This document shows, piece after piece, positions 1-3,686 of a stretch of 64,000 nt of DNA (its first letter is position 1; each line of letters opens with the position of its first letter). The position numbers were made by a program, and so were the translations under genes. Where the stretch lies: the sequence record MN988561.1. One strand, given 5' to 3'. The notes beneath the pieces are model-generated. The model saw only the letters and a list, made by a program, of their open reading frames with translations, was not told the origin of the DNA and did no database searches.

Positions 1-186
1 GGAAGCTGGGAAGTTCCTGATGGTGAAGACGATGATGGAGACTACGACTTTGAAGTCTTGACATCTAAATCGTCTAAGTCACTTCAGAACATTGTTGAGC
101 CTATCATTAAGAAATATCCAAGTCTAGATATCTACTATCAAACTGGAGAGAAGAATTATATTACTGTTCATGCTACTGTAAAGTAG
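1..186 (+). CDS. C-terminal part of a hypothetical protein running in from upstream
   Basis: Frame 1 is open from base 1 (GSWEVPDGEDDDGDYDF...VHATVK) to TAG at 184-186, just before the tRNA. Confidence 0.6.
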   Translation, partial: GSWEVPDGEDDDGDYDFEVLTSKSSKSLQNIVEPIIKKYPSLDIYYQTGEKNYITVHATVK

Positions 187-196
187 TTGACAGTAT

Positions 197-281
197 GTCG
201 GTATGGCGGAATTGGTAGACGCCCTGGTTTTAGGTACCAGTGTCGAAAGACGTGTAGGTTCGAGTCCTATTACCGACACCA
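197..281 (+). tRNA. trnL: tRNA-Leu(UAG), class II, CCA encoded
   Basis: GTCGGTA/TACCGAC acceptor, D-loop GAATTGGTAGAC, CTGGT-TT TAG GT-ACCAG anticodon arm, long variable arm, GTAGG-TTCGAGT-CCTAT T-arm, ACCA end. Confidence 0.95.
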
Positions 282-287
282 AATTAT

Positions 288-422
288 GACTTGATGTTGC
301 GAAAGAAATGGTTACTTCGTATTCCAAACGAGAAATGTAGGTATCGAATCCTGCTATCCTAATAGGATATCGTCTAAGATAGGACGCTAAAATTTCCATT
401 TCTGACACTATCTCATCAAGTC
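288..422 (+). ncRNA. Y RNA/YrlA-like unit 1 with permuted tRNA module
   Basis: Outer stem GACTTGATG/CATCAAGTC, TTGCGA...ATCT loop, inner stem AGAAATGG/CCATTTCT; cargo is T-arm GTAGG-TATCGAAT-CCTGC, then TATCCTA/TAGGATA acceptor, then D-arm GTCTAAGATAGGAC. Confidence 0.8.
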
Positions 423-430
423 TCATATTC

Positions 431-513
431 AGATCTTGACGTTGCGACTAGTATCGGATACTTCGCTTTGGTTGCTAAAAACTCCGATGCAATATACTAT
501 CTCGTCAAGATCT
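431..513 (+). ncRNA. Y RNA-like unit 2, minimal (no tRNA module)
   Basis: AGATCTTGACG/CGTCAAGATCT outer stem, TTGCGA...ATCT loop, GTATCGGA/TCCGATGC inner stem, TACTTCG motif, short apical loop. Confidence 0.75.
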
Positions 514-523
514 TTCAGTTTAT

Positions 524-668
524 CCTAACGTTGCGAATTAAACAGTTACTTCGATATCAAGCAGAAGGTCAATGGTTCGAATCCATTCATGCGACACGCG
601 TTGCATGTAGCTCAGTTGGTTAGAGCGTCCGCCACCACAAGATCTGTTTAAGTCATTATCTCGTTAGG
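524..668 (+). ncRNA. Y RNA/YrlA-like unit 3 with permuted tRNA module
   Basis: CCTAACG/CGTTAGG and TTAAACAG/CTGTTTAA stems; AATGG-TTCGAAT-CCATT T-arm precedes CATGCGA/TTGCATG acceptor and GCTC-AGTTGGTTA-GAGC D-arm. Confidence 0.85.
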
Positions 669-677
669 TCCTTATAA

Positions 678-822
678 CCTAGTGTTGCGATCGGTACAAC
701 TTCATCGCATTGTAAGCCCTGTGTCATTGGTTCAAATCCAATTCCTCCGTCCATCTATCGGAGGATAGCTCAGTCTGGTAGAGCAAGGAAAGTATGTTGT
801 ATCAATATACCATCTCACTAGG
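678..822 (+). ncRNA. Y RNA/YrlA-like unit 4 with permuted tRNA (Thr-UGU-like)
   Basis: CCTAGTG/CACTAGG and GGTACAAC/GTTGTATC stems; ATTGG-TTCAAAT-CCAAT T-arm; TCCTCCG-TCCA-TCTAT-CGGAGGA acceptor; GCTC-AGTCTGGTA-GAGC D-arm. Confidence 0.85.
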
Positions 823-828
823 ATCCTT

Positions 829-960
829 ATCTCATCCACCAACCTCGGTGTAAGAGTGGAAAGAGTTACGTGATCGTATGAGAATACGATCACAGTCATT
901 TAGGTCATGTACCATGTGTACAAGGATCATTCGAAGGTGCTCGTCATCTTCAGCAAATAA
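829..960 (+). other. Structured spacer that does not follow the array scaffold
   Basis: GTGATCGTAT-GAGA-ATACGATCAC perfect 10-bp GNRA hairpin, plus TCCAC/GTGGA and TGTAC/GTACA stems; no GTTGCGA. Confidence 0.4.
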
Positions 961-1104
961 TGTAGAGTTGCGAATATATCAAGTTCATCGCTTACCATAT
1001 ACCAAGCGGGTAGCTCAGTGGTTAGAGCACTAGGATGTAACAGTCGTAGAGGTCGTCGGTTCGAATCCGACTCTAACTTCTTGATATAGACTTATCTCTC
1101 TACA
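961..1104 (+). ncRNA. Y RNA-like unit 5, tRNA module opened within the acceptor stem
   Basis: TGTAGAG/CTCTACA and TATATCAAG/CTTGATATA stems; CGCTT-ACCA-linker-AAGCGGG, then D-arm, distorted anticodon arm and GTCGG-TTCGAAT-CCGAC T-arm. Confidence 0.8.
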
Positions 1105-1113
1105 ACTTTTATA

Positions 1114-1248
1114 TGTACTGTTGCGACTAATACGGTTACTTCGTTGCAAATGAAACATAGGTTCGAATCCTATCCAGAGGATTGTCGTAAGATGACATCT
1201 GGCTGAGCATTGGTGAGCTCATCTCCGTATTAACTACATCTCAGTACA
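1114..1248 (+). ncRNA. Y RNA/YrlA-like unit 6 with permuted tRNA (Cys-GCA-like)
   Basis: TGTACTG/CAGTACA and TAATACGG/CCGTATTA stems; TTGCAAA loop; ATAGG-TTCGAAT-CCTAT T-arm; CCAGA/TCTGG acceptor; GAGC-ATTGGTGA-GCTC D-arm. Confidence 0.85.
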
Positions 1249-1258
1249 ATTACAATTC

Positions 1259-1415
1259 GTACCGTTGCGAATGATATGAATACATCGCTGTAGAACCGAC
1301 GTCGTAAGACATGCTAGTTCAAGTCTAGCTCTCCGTCCCAATACTATGACGGAGATGGTGAAATTGGTAGACACATCGGTAGATAAATCTTCATATCGGC
1401 TTACAATCTCGGTAT
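1259..1415 (+). ncRNA. Y RNA/YrlA-like unit 7 with permuted class II tRNA (Leu/Tyr-like)
   Basis: GTACCG/CGGTAT and GATATGAA/TTCATATC stems; variable arm CGTCGTAAGACAT; GCTAG-TTCAAGT-CTAGC T-arm; TCTCCGT-CCCA...ACGGAGA acceptor; GTGAAATTGGTAGACAC D-arm. Confidence 0.85.
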
Positions 1416-1424
1416 ATCTTAGAC

Positions 1425-1449
1425 GCTATGTTGCGATAGTCCTCATAGC
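1425..1449 (+). promoter_or_regulatory. Minimal TTGCGA hairpin in the Ro60 leader (candidate autoregulatory site)
   Basis: GCTATG-TTGCGA-TAGTCCT-CATAGC lies about 8 nt before the AGGGA SD-like sequence and 20 nt before the ATG at 1470. Confidence 0.5.
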
Positions 1450-1469
1450 ATTATCATAGGGAAAATGTC

Positions 1470-3038
1470 ATGGCTTCGATCAATAATAAGTCAGTTGCTA
1501 ATCTTGCACGTACGGTTGCTCCTAAGGCAGTTGTAGCACCTCGTACATTCACTGGTTTATCTCATAACATTCGTAACAATAATGGTGCGATGGCGTATGA
1601 TATCACTCCTATCGAGCAATTGAGACGTACTGTTCTCTCTTGCATGCTCTGGGAGGATTCTGCATATGAGTCTGGTGAACAGATTGCTAATCGTATTGAA
1701 AGATTGATCGGAGAGTGTGATCCCTCTGATGTAGCACATCTTGCTCGTGAAGCAAGACATATCATGAAGCTACGTCATGTTCCTCTCTTTATGTGCATCA
1801 CGATGCTGAAGTATCCCGAACATAAGAAATATGTTCGTAAGACACTCGCATCAGTTATTGAGCGTCCTGATGAGCTTGGTCAAGCTCTCGCTCTCTACTG
1901 GAAGGATGCTCTTTCTCCTGCTCGTACTACTGAAGATACTGAAATCGGACCTCGAGTTACTTACGTTTCTCAGAGAAAGTCTGATCTGAATCTTCCTCTC
2001 CAACTACGTAGAGGTCTTGAAGATGCTCTACAGAAGTTTGACTCTTATCAGTTGAAGAAGTACCTTATGAAGGACAAGCCTGTCTCTATGGCTGACATTC
2101 TTCGTATCGTCCACCCTAAGGGTAAGACTGATGAGATCAAAGCTACCTATGGCGAAATCGTCAAGGGTACTGCTACTGCACCTGATACATGGGAGTCTCG
2201 TCTCTCATCTTCTGGTAGATCTGAGAAAGCTACAATCTTCACAGATATGCTCGAACGTAACAAATTAGGTGCAATGGCTCTACTGAAGAATCTGCGTGGT
2301 ATGACTGAGGCTGGTGTTGATACCAATCTTATTAATACTGCGATTCAGAAGATGAATACTGAACGTGTTCTTCCTTTCAGATTCCTCACAGCTGCTCGTC
2401 ATGCTCCTCAGTTCAAGTCTAGTCTCGGTGAGGCTATGCTAAAATCTCTGAAGGACATTCAGAATCTGCCTGGTCATACAGTACTACTGATTGACATCTC
2501 AGGTAGTATGGGTGGACGTATTTCAGGTAAGTCTGATCTGAGACGTATTGATGCTGCAGCTGCTATTGCTATCATGTTGAAGGAAATTTGTCAGTCTTCT
2601 GATATGTTTGTCTTCAATTATGGTACGTATCAAGTACGTAACGATAACGTCTTCTGCGTGAATCAACCTACTGCTAACAATCACGGATACTCCAGGATTG
2701 TTGAGAGTACGAGGATCTACAATTACGAAGAAGATGCTGTAGTGAAGAGAGGATTTGATCTATCAGATCTTATCGTCAATTCAGTAGTTGGTGGAACTGA
2801 TCTCCAGCAAGCTGTCAGTTACATCAATAATACTGTAGAGTATGATCGTATGATTATCTTTACAGATGACGAATCATCTACTGTTCCGCCAGCTCCTAGA
2901 GGTCTTTCCTATTCGATCAATGTATCGACTGGAAACTATGGAGTGACGTACGGTGATTATGTCCACATCAACGGATTCTCTGAAGGTGTGATCGGCTATG
3001 TCACTGAGTACGACAAGTACGTGAAGAGTCAGAATTAA
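1470..3038 (+). CDS. rsr: TROVE-domain RNA-binding protein (Ro60/Rsr ortholog) with C-terminal vWA domain
   Basis: EQLRRTVLSCMLWED, TWESRLS, LGAMALLKNLRGM, VLPFRF TROVE motifs; MIDAS DISGS...GGTD...FTDDE. Confidence 0.93.
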   Translation: MASINNKSVANLARTVAPKAVVAPRTFTGLSHNIRNNNGAMAYDITPIEQLRRTVLSCMLWEDSAYESGEQIANRIERLIGECDPSDVAHLAREARHIMKLRHVPLFMCITMLKYPEHKKYVRKTLASVIERPDELGQALALYWKDALSPARTTEDTEIGPRVTYVSQRKSDLNLPLQLRRGLEDALQKFDSYQLKKYLMKDKPVSMADILRIVHPKGKTDEIKATYGEIVKGTATAPDTWESRLSSSGRSEKATIFTDMLERNKLGAMALLKNLRGMTEAGVDTNLINTAIQKMNTERVLPFRFLTAARHAPQFKSSLGEAMLKSLKDIQNLPGHTVLLIDISGSMGGRISGKSDLRRIDAAAAIAIMLKEICQSSDMFVFNYGTYQVRNDNVFCVNQPTANNHGYSRIVESTRIYNYEEDAVVKRGFDLSDLIVNSVVGGTDLQQAVSYINNTVEYDRMIIFTDDESSTVPPAPRGLSYSINVSTGNYGVTYGDYVHINGFSEGVIGYVTEYDKYVKSQN

Positions 3039-3045
3039 GTAGTGA

Positions 3046-3073
3046 GAATTGGGAGTGAAATACCTCCCAATTC
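3046..3073 (+). terminator. Hairpin after the TROVE gene (terminator or processing site)
   Basis: GAATTGGGAG/CTCCCAATTC 10-bp stem followed by CATTTAT. Confidence 0.55.
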
Positions 3074-3086
3074 CATTTATCTAAAT

Positions 3087-3170
3087 GCCCACTTGATGGA
3101 ATTGGTAGACATAAGGCACTTAAAATGCCTAGCTTAATGCGTACCGGTTCGAGTCCGGTAGTGGGTACCA
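3087..3170 (+). tRNA. trnL: tRNA-Leu(UAA), CCA encoded
   Basis: GCCCACT/AGTGGGT acceptor, AGGCA-CT TAA AA-TGCCT anticodon arm, long variable arm, ACCGG-TTCGAGT-CCGGT T-arm, ACCA. Confidence 0.95.
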
Positions 3171-3288
3171 TCAAACTCAACCCCAAAATCACCTAGCCAA
3201 ACTCATTATAAATCATAGGCTTCATGAAGAGACCGATGTATCAGATAAGCTGACAAGCTATCTTGATTTCGTAGAAGGGATTCTCAAC

Positions 3289-3462
3289 ATGCCTAGTCTT
3301 GACTTTGCACAGATAGTACCTGTTGAAGCGACTATTCTGAAAATTGTAGTCATGCCAAAGGATGGGACTTGTTCAGTCTGGTATAGTATTCGCAACACTG
3401 TACATAAGACTGATCTAATCAGAGAAGAAGACAAATGGACGAGAGTAGTAACAGTACATTAG
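3289..3462 (+). CDS. Possible small hypothetical protein (reading frame is open further upstream without an ATG)
   Basis: MPSLDFAQIVPVEATILKIVVMPKDGTCSVWYSIRNTVHK...; overlaps the next gene start. Confidence 0.3.
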   Translation: MPSLDFAQIVPVEATILKIVVMPKDGTCSVWYSIRNTVHKTDLIREEDKWTRVVTVH

Positions 3463-3686
3463 ATGAGTTAGATATCCGTATCTGGATTGCCCTATCTAAC
3501 TTAAAAAGTGCTGTTAATGCTAAAATGAAAGATAGAGGTATATCAAACTATCTTGTTGATCTGAACCTTAAGATCAGCGAACGAGATATTTTGACAGACG
3601 GAAAATTTCACTCTGAATTTCCCATACCTGACTACAAAGATATTGATCCTCAAATCCTGAGCGTTTACATGAGCGAGGATCGTTAG
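3435..3686 (+). CDS. Hypothetical protein
   Basis: 83-aa ORF with AGAAG upstream, followed by a terminator. Confidence 0.6.
   Translation: MDESSNSTLDELDIRIWIALSNLKSAVNAKMKDRGISNYLVDLNLKISERDILTDGKFHSEFPIPDYKDIDPQILSVYMSEDR

What the first reader, a model, noticed from the sequence alone, without database searches (positions are those of the whole stretch)
988..1080. Unit 5 is permuted at a different position, inside the acceptor stem
Seen: the order is CGCTT-A-CCA, linker, AAGCGGG, D-arm, distorted anticodon arm (CTAGG..10 nt..CGTAG), AGGTC, T-arm, TC. The tRNA circle was therefore opened between about nt 67 and 68, not at the anticodon, and the conserved TCG motif supplies part of the acceptor helix. 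Inference: the Ro handle can be grafted on at more than one position. This argues for capture of circular tRNA intermediates and for a different presented surface (anticodon arm exposed).
Basis: partly seen in the sequence, partly recalled or inferred. Interest (0 to 1): 0.72.

Follow-up and report, generated by a model that had tools for sequence, protein, structure and literature searches.

The report
Differently permuted tRNA-like phage Y RNA
One of seven small RNAs encoded just upstream of a Rhizobium phage's Ro60 gene carries a complete tRNA look-alike that is joined to its Ro60-binding stem through the acceptor stem rather than the anticodon side; this is a rare new layout of a known RNA class (bacterial Y RNAs), and its function is untested.

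Summary
The window is a Rhizobium phage RHph_TM30-type genome. Bases 288-1416 hold seven Y-RNA-like units directly upstream of a TROVE/Ro60 gene (1470-3038). Each unit has a closing stem, a GTTGCGA...ATCTC internal loop and a second stem.

Unit 5 (961-1104) is the only one whose insert reads: acceptor 3' strand CGCTT, ACCA, a 6-nt spacer, acceptor 5' strand AAGCGGG, U8-A9, D arm, a non-canonical anticodon-like arm, AGGTC, T arm, TC. This is a tRNA circle opened at about 66-68.

- Rfam's tRNA model hits its core (33.9 bits).
- ARAGORN calls a tRNA only after in-silico un-permutation.
- Phage Y65 keeps the layout, with a compensatory change in the anticodon-like stem.
- A metagenomic phage contig (L004, Ro60 47% identical) has two units of the same topology and one cut at 7/8.
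- About 245 other Ro60 loci showed only the canonical YrlA order or an unpermuted form.

My reading is a YrlA-class, Ro60-tethered tRNA mimic with a new permutation point.

The inference that the Ro handle can attach at several positions is supported. Capture of circular tRNAs is not needed. The retained NCCA-plus-spacer loops and a leftover start of a second tRNA copy in L004 fit the published tandem-tRNA-dimer model better.

No expression, Ro60-binding or processing data exist.

The parts
288..1416 (+). Array of seven Y-RNA-like units (U1 288-423, U2 431-514, U3 524-669, U4 678-823, U5 961-1104, U6 1114-1249, U7 1259-1416). Each has a closing stem, GTTGCGA, stem 2, an insert, ATCTC and the closing stem again.
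   Evidence: GTTGCGA occurs 8 times on the + strand in 296-1436, and 16 times in the window against 4.6 expected. The closing stems are 5-10 bp, all different in sequence and all paired. U3 and U4 hit Rfam YrlA at 36-37 bits, below the gathering score of 69.
961..966 (+). U5 closing (presumed Ro60-binding) stem, 5' strand TGTAGA. It pairs with 1099-1104.
   Evidence: (pair probability 0.8-1.0)
967..973 (+). Conserved 5' motif GTTGCGA (followed by A974, so it contains CGAA), in the internal loop opposite ATCTC
   Evidence: The CGAA / GNCGAA motif is the conserved Ro-side feature of bacterial and phage Y RNAs.
975..983 (+). Stem 2, 5' strand. It pairs with 1080-1088.
   Evidence: (probability 0.8-0.99)
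984..988 (+). 5' single-stranded linker TTCAT. T988 may wobble-pair with G1009.
989..993 (+). Acceptor-stem 3' strand CGCTT (tRNA positions 68-72), placed upstream of the rest of the tRNA-like body
994..997 (+). Discriminator A plus CCA, retained inside the closed acceptor loop
   Evidence: All 21 tRNA genes called in the 27-kb tRNA region and the window encode CCA.
998..1003 (+). Spacer TATACC linking CCA to position 1
1004..1010 (+). Acceptor-stem 5' strand AAGCGGG (positions 1-7)
1011..1028 (+). U8-A9 and the D arm (GCTC / AGTGGTTA / GAGC), with A14, G15, G18-G19 and A21
1030..1049 (+). Anticodon-like arm: CTA-G-GAT / GTAACA / GTC-G-TAG. Seven of the eight TM30/Y65 differences in U5 lie here. 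The stem is kept by one double and one single compensating change.
1050..1071 (+). Variable loop AGGTC and T arm GTCGG / TTCGAAT / CCGAC
   Evidence: probability 0.92-0.97
1072..1073 (+). T66 and C67, the inferred partners of G1010 and G1009. The cloverleaf circle is open after this point.
   Evidence: Inferred from the tRNA frame. Not predicted thermodynamically.
1074..1079 (+). 3' single-stranded linker TAACTT. Y65 has one extra A here.
1080..1088 (+). Stem 2, 3' strand
1094..1104 (+). Conserved 3' motif ATCTC (1094-1098) and closing-stem 3' strand TCTACA (1099-1104)
1470..3038 (+). rsr: TROVE/Ro60 orthologue with a vWA domain (522 aa)
   Evidence: Pfam TROVE E = 2.8e-13

Best explanation
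Unit 5 is a phage-encoded Y RNA of the YrlA kind.

Architecture (shown):
- Its 5' and 3' ends pair into the same scaffold as its six neighbours: closing stem, GUUGCGA/AUCUC internal loop, stem 2. This is presumably the binding site for the Ro60 protein encoded 370 nt downstream.
- The scaffold carries a complete tRNA-shaped module with a canonical elbow.
- Two single-stranded linkers of 4-6 nt join the scaffold to the cloverleaf at a break in the 3' strand of the acceptor stem (66/67 or 67/68).
- The acceptor top is closed by an A-CCA-UAUACC loop.
- All four arms are present: acceptor, D, an anticodon-like arm and T.

Mechanism (inferred):
- The L-shape forms with the acceptor top stacking on the T arm across the nick, giving a three-way junction.
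- Ro60 binds the scaffold.
- The tRNA mimic recruits or occupies a tRNA-binding host factor, as proposed for YrlA. Candidates are a processing, modification or repair enzyme, PNPase or another nuclease.
- Host RNase P may open the acceptor loop 5' of A1004 and leave a CCA end, as shown for Mycobacterium smegmatis YrlA.

Origin (inferred): a one-tRNA-long window (68-76, spacer, 1-67) cut out of a tandem tRNA dimer, the same route proposed for canonical YrlA but in a different phase.
For: Context:
- The window matches Rhizobium phage RHph_TM30 and its relatives. A TROVE gene lies at 1470-3038.
- There are seven units with the same scaffold, and their stems differ in sequence but stay paired.
- U3 and U4 hit Rfam YrlA below threshold.
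- The CGAA motif plus the TTAC(T/A)TC-like junction motif recur in YrlAs of many other Ro60 loci.

tRNA module:
- Rfam tRNA scores 33.9 bits, above the gathering score of 29.
- The MFE and the alifold consensus both give the cloverleaf.
- ARAGORN calls a tRNA only after un-permutation.
- The frame is intact: 7 nt, then TA, then the D stem.
- The chance of the upstream complement plus NCCA is about 0.2%.

Conservation:
- In Y65 (94.9% identical across the array), 7 of the 8 differences in U5 fall in the 20-nt anticodon-like arm. They include T:A to C:G and U.G to C:G. The eighth is one extra A in a linker.
- L004 (Ro60 47% identical) has unit A sharing TTCATCGCTT...AGCGGG with U5 (24.6 bits with my model).
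- L004 unit B has a wholly different acceptor sequence (GTCTCC-G-CCA-TCTAT-GGAGACG) in the same topology.

Precedent:
- YrlA is a structurally proven tRNA mimic, described as a circularly permuted tRNA.
- M. smegmatis YrlA is cut by RNase P and gains CCA in vivo.
Against: - There is no expression, end-mapping, Ro60-binding or probing data for this phage.
- Close comparison rests on two sequences only (TM30 group and Y65). Apart from the anticodon-like arm, every pair is invariant and therefore uninformative.
- The two acceptor pairs that define the break are not predicted thermodynamically. The acceptor-top hairpin (0.41-0.47) and the D arm (0.34) have only moderate pair probability.
- The Rfam YrlA model does not match U5 even at E <= 10.
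- A scaffold attached in the acceptor/T helix could hinder RNase P, so the cleavage step is speculative.
- No promoter or terminator delimits the units.
- No donor tRNA was found: identity is about 70% or less to the phage's own tRNAs and about 81% to any tRNA in the phage database.
Confidence: 0.7

Rival explanations
1. Decaying relic. A tRNA (or the end of a tRNA dimer) became trapped inside a Y-RNA scaffold, and the unusual order has no function of its own.
For: - The anticodon-like arm is non-canonical and changes between TM30 and Y65.
- L004 unit A, the apparent orthologue, has lost CCA and has a broken T stem.
- The topology is rare: no further true case in about 245 other Ro60 loci.
Against: - Outside the anticodon-like arm, U5 shows no substitutions between TM30 and Y65, only one inserted A in the 3' linker, while neighbouring units differ by up to 14.6%.
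- Changes in the arm preserve pairing.
- All tertiary-contact nucleotides of the elbow are intact.
- The same topology recurs with an unrelated acceptor sequence in L004 unit B.
Confidence: 0.13
2. A genuine circularly permuted tRNA gene. Its transcript is cut and re-ligated, through a circular intermediate, into a decoding tRNA.
For: - The order is 3' end, CCA, spacer, 5' end, as in algal and archaeal permuted tRNA genes.
- The un-permuted sequence is called a tRNA by ARAGORN.
Against: - The anticodon arm has a 7-position stem with a G.G mismatch and a 6-nt loop (5 nt in Y65), or 8 and 7 nt in ARAGORN's reading. The 'anticodon' is not conserved: an undetermined 4-base 'taac' in TM30 against Arg-acg in Y65.
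- The ends sit in the same Ro-type scaffold as the six neighbours, not in a bulge-helix-bulge motif.
- Known junctions are 20/21, 37/38, 50/51 and 59/60, and they need a splicing endonuclease not reported in bacteria.
Confidence: 0.03
3. The repeated stem / GTTGCGA / ATCTC units are not Ro60 sites. They are processing or punctuation elements of the phage tRNA cluster (for example RNase III or RNase E sites), and the tRNA-like inserts are incidental.
For: - The array lies inside a long tRNA-gene region.
- No internal promoters or terminators were found.
- Ro60 binding is untested.
Against: - The units are confined to the 1.2 kb directly upstream of rsr. GTTGCGA does occur at eight other, scattered positions in the 64-kb window, on both strands, but those were not inspected and are not clustered.
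- The same kind of arrays precede Ro60 genes in unrelated contigs (L004 and L085).
- U3 and U4 match the YrlA model.
- The motif contains the CGAA signature of Y RNAs.
Confidence: 0.05
4. Origin rival. The permutation arose by capture of a circularised tRNA, with 3' CCA ligated to the 5' end and the product copied back into DNA, rather than from a tandem tRNA dimer.
For: Reverse transcription of circular or permuted pre-tRNAs is one published model for permuted tRNA genes. Several different break points exist.
Against: - A 5-8-nt spacer separates CCA from position 1 in U4, U5, U7 and L004-B.
- L004 unit C keeps the first 10 nt or so of a second tRNA copy after its acceptor 3' strand.
- Several phage tRNA genes sit 1-3 nt apart, and all 21 called encode CCA, so dimers are plentiful.
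- The dimer model is already proposed for YrlA.
- No gene annotated as a reverse transcriptase appears in the stretches whose annotation I read. This rests on GenBank product names only; I ran no search for one.
Confidence: 0.1

Closest known systems
YrlA (Rfam RF02553), the tRNA-like Y RNA of Salmonella and more than 250 bacteria and phages
   Same: - Encoded next to rsr/Ro60.
- The ends pair into a stem carrying a CGAA-type motif.
- The effector module has tRNA D and T arms with conserved elbow nucleotides and a loop-closed acceptor stem.
- Described in the literature as a circularly permuted tRNA.
   Different: - YrlA order is T arm, closed acceptor, D arm, with the scaffold continuing from the anticodon stem and no anticodon loop.
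- Unit 5 order is acceptor top, D, anticodon-like arm, T, with the scaffold entering at 66-68.
- The YrlA model gives no hit on unit 5.
Deinococcus radiodurans Yrn1
   Same: A D-like element, then an 'anticodon arm' (5-bp stem, 6-nt loop), then the T arm between the strands of the Ro-binding stem. This is the opposite orientation to YrlA.
   Different: Yrn1 has no acceptor hairpin, no CCA and no variable loop, and its D arm is doubtful. Unit 5 has all of these.
Mycobacterium smegmatis YrlA (processed form)
   Same: A seven-pair acceptor stem closed by a loop. It is cut by RNase P and ends in CCA, giving a two-piece Ro60-bound RNA. Units 4, 5 and 7 here already encode NCCA in that loop.
   Different: In M. 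smegmatis the scaffold is on the anticodon side and CA is added after cleavage. Cleavage of unit 5 is untested.
Circularly permuted tRNA genes of Cyanidioschyzon merolae, green algae and Thermofilum pendens
   Same: The 3' part of the tRNA lies upstream of the 5' part, joined by a 1-74-bp intervening sequence between the 3' end and position 1. A tandem-duplication origin has been proposed.
   Different: - Those genes mature into decoding tRNAs through bulge-helix-bulge cleavage and ligation.
- Their junctions are at 20/21, 37/38, 50/51 and 59/60, never in the acceptor stem.
- Unit 5 has no usable anticodon loop and ends in a Ro-type scaffold.
Two-piece (permuted) tmRNA of Alphaproteobacteria and their phages
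   Same: A tRNA-like acceptor/T domain encoded in permuted order, with the CCA end upstream of the 5' end and an excised linker. The family is found in Brevundimonas phages next to their Ro60 genes. That the Rhizobium host itself processes such precursors is my own background knowledge, not tested here.
   Different: tmRNA has a tag reading frame and pseudoknots, and it is not linked to Ro60. ARAGORN, whose output covers tmRNA as well, lists no tmRNA in the window.

Membership tests
YrlA-class Y RNA (RF02553) | Encoded adjacent to an rsr/Ro60 (TROVE) gene | tested here: met
   Unit 5 ends 366 nt upstream of the TROVE ORF at 1470-3038.
YrlA-class Y RNA (RF02553) | The 5' and 3' ends pair into a stem with a conserved CGAA-type motif in a bulge or internal loop | tested here: met
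   TGTAGA/TCTACA closing stem, with GTTGCGA-A opposite ATCTC. The motif is as described.
YrlA-class Y RNA (RF02553) | Bound by Ro60/Rsr | not testable with these tools
   No binding data. Inferred from the motif and gene adjacency.
YrlA-class Y RNA (RF02553) | tRNA-like D and T arms with conserved elbow nucleotides | tested here: met
   Rfam tRNA 33.9 bits over model positions 6-65. G18-G19, the TTCGAAT loop, and the G15/C48 bases that would form the Levitt pair are all present.
YrlA-class Y RNA (RF02553) | Order T arm, loop-closed acceptor, D arm, with the scaffold continuing from the anticodon stem; match to the covariance model | tested here: not met
   The order is acceptor top, D, anticodon-like arm, T. 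There is no RF02553 hit on 961-1104 at E <= 10, whereas U3 and U4 hit.
Canonical tRNA gene | Acceptor stem formed by the two ends of a contiguous 1-76 sequence | tested here: not met
   ARAGORN finds nothing in the native sequence. The Rfam alignment stops at positions 6 and 65.
Canonical tRNA gene | Five-pair anticodon stem with a 7-nt loop and a conserved anticodon | tested here: not met
   The arm is 20 nt (19 nt in Y65), with a G.G mismatch and a 6-nt or 5-nt loop. The loop sequence was rewritten between TM30 and Y65.
Circularly permuted tRNA gene (algal/archaeal type) | The 3' segment lies upstream of the 5' segment, joined by an intervening sequence between the 3' end and position 1 | tested here: met
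   989-997 (68-76), then a 6-nt spacer, then 1004-1073 (1-67).
Circularly permuted tRNA gene (algal/archaeal type) | Termini form a bulge-helix-bulge motif and are ligated to give a mature decoding tRNA | tested here: not met
   The termini lie in a 9-bp stem plus a Ro-type internal loop shared with six non-identical neighbours. Ligation is untestable here.
Yrn1-type Y RNA (Deinococcus) | D-like element, anticodon-like arm and T arm between the Ro-stem strands, with no acceptor stem | tested here: inconclusive
   The arm order is the same, but unit 5 has an acceptor hairpin with CCA and a variable loop. No Yrn1 sequence was available to align.

The most novel reading that the evidence does not exclude
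Phage Ro60 loci hold a natural 'permutation series' of tRNA mimics. The same closed cloverleaf-plus-scaffold circle is opened on the anticodon/D side, at 66-68, at 7/8, or at the acceptor end.

Unit-5-type RNAs would be the members built to present an uninterrupted D/anticodon limb. After RNase P cleavage they would also present a free CCA end. The Ro60 particle would then engage, or act as a decoy for, a host factor that reads the anticodon limb. Examples are an anticodon nuclease used in anti-phage defence, or a modification or aminoacylation enzyme.

The fast, stem-preserving turnover of the anticodon-like loop between TM30 and Y65 would then reflect an arms race.
Probability: 0.15. Interest if true: 0.85.

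Novelty: new variant of a known kind. Interest (0 to 1): 0.58.

Why it matters
Bacterial Y RNAs are thought to tether Ro60 to an unknown tRNA-binding effector through a tRNA mimic. The only well-described tRNA-mimicking layout, YrlA, hides the anticodon side in the Ro60 scaffold.

- **A second attachment point.** A layout conserved in two related phage species and echoed in a distant contig attaches the scaffold in the acceptor stem and keeps all four arms. So the effector does not need one fixed geometry between Ro60 and the mimic.
- **An experimental handle.** Comparing which layouts bind which host proteins could map the recognised tRNA surface.
- **Evidence on origin.** The retained NCCA-plus-spacer loops and the partial second tRNA copy are unusually direct sequence support for the tandem-tRNA-dimer origin of Y RNAs.
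- **Annotation.** A 1.1-kb, seven-gene non-coding array is unannotated in all eight deposited genomes.

Tried and rejected
1. **Closer relatives of the Ro60 gene, to get covariation.**
   - IMG/VR with the protein alone found nothing.
   - The nearest proteins are 44-50% identical. P0002's 88.6-kb contig could not be fetched and is absent from the plasmid and species-representative genome collections.
   - P0004, P0005, P0007, P0008 and P0009 sit on contigs with little or no upstream DNA.
   - L085 (P0006) has five units, all in canonical order or lacking a tRNA-like domain.
2. **Profile scans of IMG/VR, JGI metagenomes and genomes.** These returned 240 Ro60 loci, all 42% identical or less. 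They served for a census, not for covariation.
3. **A covariance model of unit 5 (R1).** It recovers true tRNAs and forces canonical YrlAs into the model. Only L004 units A, B and C were relevant. It is too sequence-specific to prove absence elsewhere.
4. **Motif scans for 'D arm before T arm without a complete tRNA', and for an upstream acceptor hairpin**. Every hit except unit 5 was a false positive, where the Ro-side motif GGTG..GAAG...TTACTTC mimics a D arm.
5. **Exact-pattern scans of IMG/VR for TTCATCGCTT..AGCGGG and GTTGCGA..TTCATCG**.
6. **Donor tRNA search**. No close donor was found.
7. **Promoter and terminator scan**. Counts were no higher than in shuffled sequence, so transcript boundaries remain unknown.
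8. **MAFFT alignment of the four unit-5-type sequences**. It misaligned L004-B, so I compared elements by hand.
Full report
**Where the window comes from**

Bases 280-1470 are 100% identical to Rhizobium phage RHph_TM30 and six close relatives, 99.9% identical to TM39, and 94.9% identical to RHph_Y65. These are genomes of up to about 207 kb in Kleczkowskaviridae, genus Cuauhnahuacvirus.

The finding lies in a 1.2-kb stretch that carries no annotation in any of those records. The stretch sits between tRNA-Leu(tag) (197-281) and a 'TROVE domain-containing protein' gene (1470-3038), at the end of a long tRNA-gene region. Pfam confirms TROVE (E = 2.8e-13) followed by weak, sub-threshold vWA-type matches, the make-up of Ro60/Rsr.

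**The array**

GTTGCGA occurs eight times on the + strand between 296 and 1436. The whole window has 16 copies against 4.6 expected.

Seven of the copies head complete units built the same way:
- a 5-10-bp closing stem whose sequence differs in every unit but always pairs
- GTTGCGA on the 5' side opposite ATCTC on the 3' side
- a second 7-9-bp stem, again different in each unit
- an insert

Units 3 and 4 hit the Rfam YrlA model at 36-37 bits, below its gathering score of 69. The motif contains the CGAA signature used to recognise bacterial and phage Y RNAs. It is followed by a TTAC(T/A)TC-type junction motif that I also see in YrlAs of many unrelated Ro60 loci.

I therefore read the array as seven Y RNAs. 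The 'Ro handle' is an inference from motif and position, not a tested interaction.

**The observation itself**

Unit 5 spans 961-1104. Its insert reads:
- linker TTCAT (984-988)
- CGCTT (989-993)
- A-CCA (994-997)
- TATACC (998-1003)
- AAGCGGG (1004-1010)
- TA
- D arm GCTC/AGTGGTTA/GAGC
- A
- a 20-nt anticodon-like arm
- AGGTC
- T arm GTCGG/TTCGAAT/CCGAC
- T1072-C1073
- linker TAACTT

Exactly seven nucleotides precede the U8-A9-like TA, as in a tRNA. CGCTT pairs with positions 1-5 and is followed by a discriminator base and CCA.

Evidence for the fold:
- The MFE fold and the RNAalifold consensus with Y65 both return the closing stem, stem 2, the CGCTT/AAGCG hairpin and the three arms.
- Rfam's tRNA model hits 1009-1073 above its gathering score, but only over model positions 6-65.
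- ARAGORN ignores the native sequence. It calls a tRNA when 989-997 is placed after 1073.
- In 200,000 random 44-mers, a complement to positions 1-5 followed by NCCA appeared 377 times.

So the description is correct and is not a chance pattern.

The weak points are these:
- The two pairs that place the break (G1009-C1073, G1010.T1072) come from the tRNA frame, not from energy. Their pair probability is 0, and the full cloverleaf scores -34.7 against -39.5 kcal/mol for the MFE.
- T988.G1009 is an alternative pairing, so the break is at 66/67 or 67/68.
- The acceptor-top and D-arm pair probabilities are only 0.3-0.5.

**How unit 5 differs from its neighbours**

Units 1, 3, 4, 6 and 7 run T arm, loop-closed acceptor stem, D arm (D-like in units 1 and 6). 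That is the YrlA order. Unit 2 has no tRNA-like insert.

In MFE folds of units 1, 3 and 6, a local hairpin follows the junction motif and precedes the variable loop and T arm; in unit 7 a short stem there is my reading by eye. On that reading the circle is opened on the anticodon/D side, around 26/27, rather than strictly inside an anticodon loop. This detail is my reading of single-sequence folds. In unit 4 an intermolecular-style anticodon stem (CCU/AGG) is equally possible.

Units 4 and 7 also keep N-CCA plus a 5-8-nt spacer in the acceptor loop. Unit 3 has seven pairs without CCA. Units 1 and 6 are degenerate. Unit 5 is the only unit with the order acceptor top, D, anticodon-like arm, T.

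**Conservation**

TM30 and Y65 differ at 61 of 1193 aligned columns, very unevenly:

| Region | Divergence |
|---|---|
| Unit 3 | 11% |
| Unit 7 | 14.6% |
| Spacer between units 4 and 5 | 6.6% |
| Units 1, 2, 4, 6 and the leader | 1.2% or less |

In unit 5, seven of eight differences fall in the 20-nt anticodon-like arm:
- One pair changes on both sides (T:A to C:G).
- One pair changes on one side (U.G to C:G).
- The loop is rewritten and is one base shorter.

The eighth difference is an extra A in the 3' linker. The arm is therefore kept as a stem while its loop drifts. With a G.G mismatch and a 6-nt or 5-nt loop, it is not a decoding arm. ARAGORN reads an undetermined 4-base 'taac' in TM30 and Arg-acg in Y65. 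All other pairs are invariant between the two phages, which neither supports nor contradicts them.

**More distant relatives**

No close Ro60 relative exists in IMG/VR. The nearest proteins are 44-50% identical. One of them, P0003 at 47%, lies on a 46-kb ENA contig, L004. That contig carries tRNA genes and PhoH, Dam and Gp80-family genes, and looks phage-like.

Upstream of its Ro60 gene are three tRNA-like units, all in D-to-T order:
- **Unit A** shares TTCATCGCTT...AGCGGG with unit 5 and is picked up by my unit-5 covariance model (24.6 bits). It has lost CCA and has a broken T stem.
- **Unit B** has an unrelated acceptor (GTCTCC-G-CCA-TCTAT-GGAGACG), TA, D arm, a 6-bp/6-nt anticodon-like arm, T arm, then C66. 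This is the same topology, with the break unambiguously at 66/67.
- **Unit C** runs D arm, a canonical 5-bp/7-nt anticodon arm, T arm, acceptor 3' strand, GAAA, acceptor 5' strand. It is opened at 7/8.

**Census**

I collected about 245 further Ro60 loci:
- 80 from IMG/VR
- 80 from JGI metagenomes
- 80 from species-representative genomes
- six cultured phages
- a few short contigs

A covariance-model search covered only the 80 IMG/VR loci and L004, and Rfam scans covered only L004 and the six cultured phages. Only the two motif scans covered the whole set. None of these found another unit-5-type element. The usual result was canonical YrlA.

A minority (L036, L050 and two elements in L062) are the same circle opened at the acceptor end. 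They have free acceptor strands, D and T arms, and a closed Ro-type module in place of the anticodon arm.

The topology is thus rare but not unique, and it is older than the TM30/Y65 split. My methods are sequence-biased, so absence elsewhere is not proven.

**Origin**

The literature already describes YrlA as resembling a circularly permuted tRNA and proposes descent from a dimeric tRNA transcript. The same duplication-and-loss route is the leading model for permuted tRNA genes and two-piece tmRNA, with reverse transcription of circular pre-tRNA as an alternative.

Four observations here favour the dimer route:
- All 21 tRNA genes called in the 27-kb tRNA region and the window encode CCA.
- Several neighbouring tRNA genes are only 1-3 nt apart.
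- The closed acceptor loops keep N-CCA plus a short spacer.
- L004 unit C keeps GACTAGG-TA-G, the start of a second tRNA copy, right after its acceptor 3' strand and a 4-nt spacer.

A one-tRNA-long window sliding along a dimer yields all three layouts:
- 27-76, spacer, 1-26 (canonical)
- 67/68-76, spacer, 1-66/67 (unit 5 and L004-B)
- 8-76, spacer, 1-7 (L004-C)

Circular-tRNA capture would predict a direct CCA-to-position-1 joint. It is not excluded, but it is not needed. How the Ro-type scaffold is acquired each time is unexplained. Units 4 and 5 share the junction CAA(C/G)TTCATCGC, which hints at scaffold duplication followed by exchange of the insert.

**Likely mechanism**

Shown:
- the scaffold shared with six neighbours
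- a complete tRNA-like module whose elbow nucleotides are canonical (A14, G15 and C48 positioned for the Levitt pair, G18-G19, A21, TTCGAAT)
- flexible 4-6-nt linkers on both sides of the break, one of them variable in length

Inferred:
- The acceptor top stacks on the two lower pairs and the T arm across the nick. This forms a three-way junction in which the two helices joined by a zero-length strand stack coaxially.
- The scaffold projects sideways and binds Ro60.
- The L-shaped mimic engages a tRNA-binding host factor. This is proposed for YrlA on the basis of its crystal structure and its modification by TruB and DusA.
- A phage Ro60 with its Y RNAs has been shown to assemble with host PNPase in vitro, so remodelling of host RNA decay is a plausible output.

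RNase P cleavage 5' of A1004 with a CCA end at A997 is possible. M. smegmatis YrlA, which has seven acceptor pairs, is cut in vivo and in vitro. However, the scaffold entering the acceptor/T helix may interfere, so I give this step no more than even odds.

Relative to the canonical units, unit 5 leaves the D/anticodon limb uninterrupted and encumbers the acceptor/T limb.

**Comparison with known families**

- **YrlA.** Unit 5 works like a YrlA but fails that family's defining order and its covariance model.
- **Yrn1.** It shares arm order with Deinococcus Yrn1, which lacks an acceptor hairpin, CCA and a variable loop.
- **Permuted tRNA genes.** It shares gene layout with them, but their junctions are at 20/21, 37/38, 50/51 and 59/60, and they mature into real tRNAs.

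I found no paper describing this array or this permutation point. The library is incomplete: two relevant reviews were not held.

I classify it as a new variant of a known kind. It is interesting mainly to Y-RNA and tRNA-mimicry specialists. The main limits are the lack of any experimental data and the thin comparative depth.

Noticed in passing
window 288-1416: Seven complete Y-RNA-like genes lie directly upstream of rsr. No feature is annotated under the 280-1470 stretch in any of the matching GenBank records except the flanking tRNA-Leu and TROVE genes, and 'none' is listed under the unit 5 core.
   Followed up: partly
window 1420-1470: An eighth GTTGCGA sits in the loop of a small hairpin about 35 nt before the rsr start codon. 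The stretch has no differences between TM30 and Y65. It could be an autoregulatory Ro60 site in the mRNA leader.
   Followed up: no
window 824-960: The spacer between units 4 and 5 folds into several hairpins (z = -2.4). It contains GTGGAAAGAGTTAC, which resembles the 5' motif of YrlAs in other loci, but it has no T arm. Its nature is unexplained.
   Followed up: partly
window 743-765 (unit 4) and 1330-1355 (unit 7): Units 4 and 7 have seven-pair acceptor stems closed by N-CCA plus a 5-8-nt spacer. Unit 7 also has a long variable arm and a class II D arm (Leu/Ser/Tyr-like). Unit 4 and L004 unit B share the loop CCATCTAT.
   Followed up: partly
window 524-669 and 1259-1416 versus L002: Divergence between TM30 and Y65 is patchy. 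Unit 3 differs by 11% and unit 7 by 14.6%, mostly with pair-preserving changes in T, D and acceptor stems. Units 1, 2, 4 and 6 differ by 1.2% or less. The cause could be fast module evolution or recombination.
   Followed up: partly
L004 4090-4960 and 2447-2577: All three tRNA-like Y units of this contig are in D-to-T order with two different break points (66/67 and 7/8). The same contig has a match to the skipping-rope RNA (RF02924) at 37.2 bits, just over the gathering score of 36.7.
   Followed up: partly
L036 2458-2588; L050 2321-2449; L062 3952-4076 and 4089-4217: These are tRNA-like RNAs next to Ro60 genes with free acceptor ends, D and T arms, and a closed Ro-type module (GGTGGCG.AGG...TTACTTC) where the anticodon arm should be. 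With introns allowed, ARAGORN calls them tRNAs with introns of 33-51 nt.
   Followed up: partly
L249 6789-7046; L250 6357-6702: Brevundimonas phages Bambus and Gurke encode a permuted tmRNA (RF04321, about 58 bits) 2-2.5 kb downstream of their Ro60 genes.
   Followed up: no
L250 2781-2855; L253 2816-2883; L251 2143-2210: GenBank 'tRNA' features just upstream of Ro60 genes in phages Gurke (tRNA-Ser), 10KY502B (tRNA-Thr) and CcrColossus (tRNA-Gln) overlap sub-threshold YrlA hits. They are probably YrlA tRNA-like modules called as tRNAs.
   Followed up: no
window 3046-3073: The only terminator-like hairpin in 1-3500 lies right after the rsr stop codon and before tRNA-Leu(taa). No promoter-like enrichment was seen within the array. 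This is consistent with co-transcription of the array and rsr.
   Followed up: no
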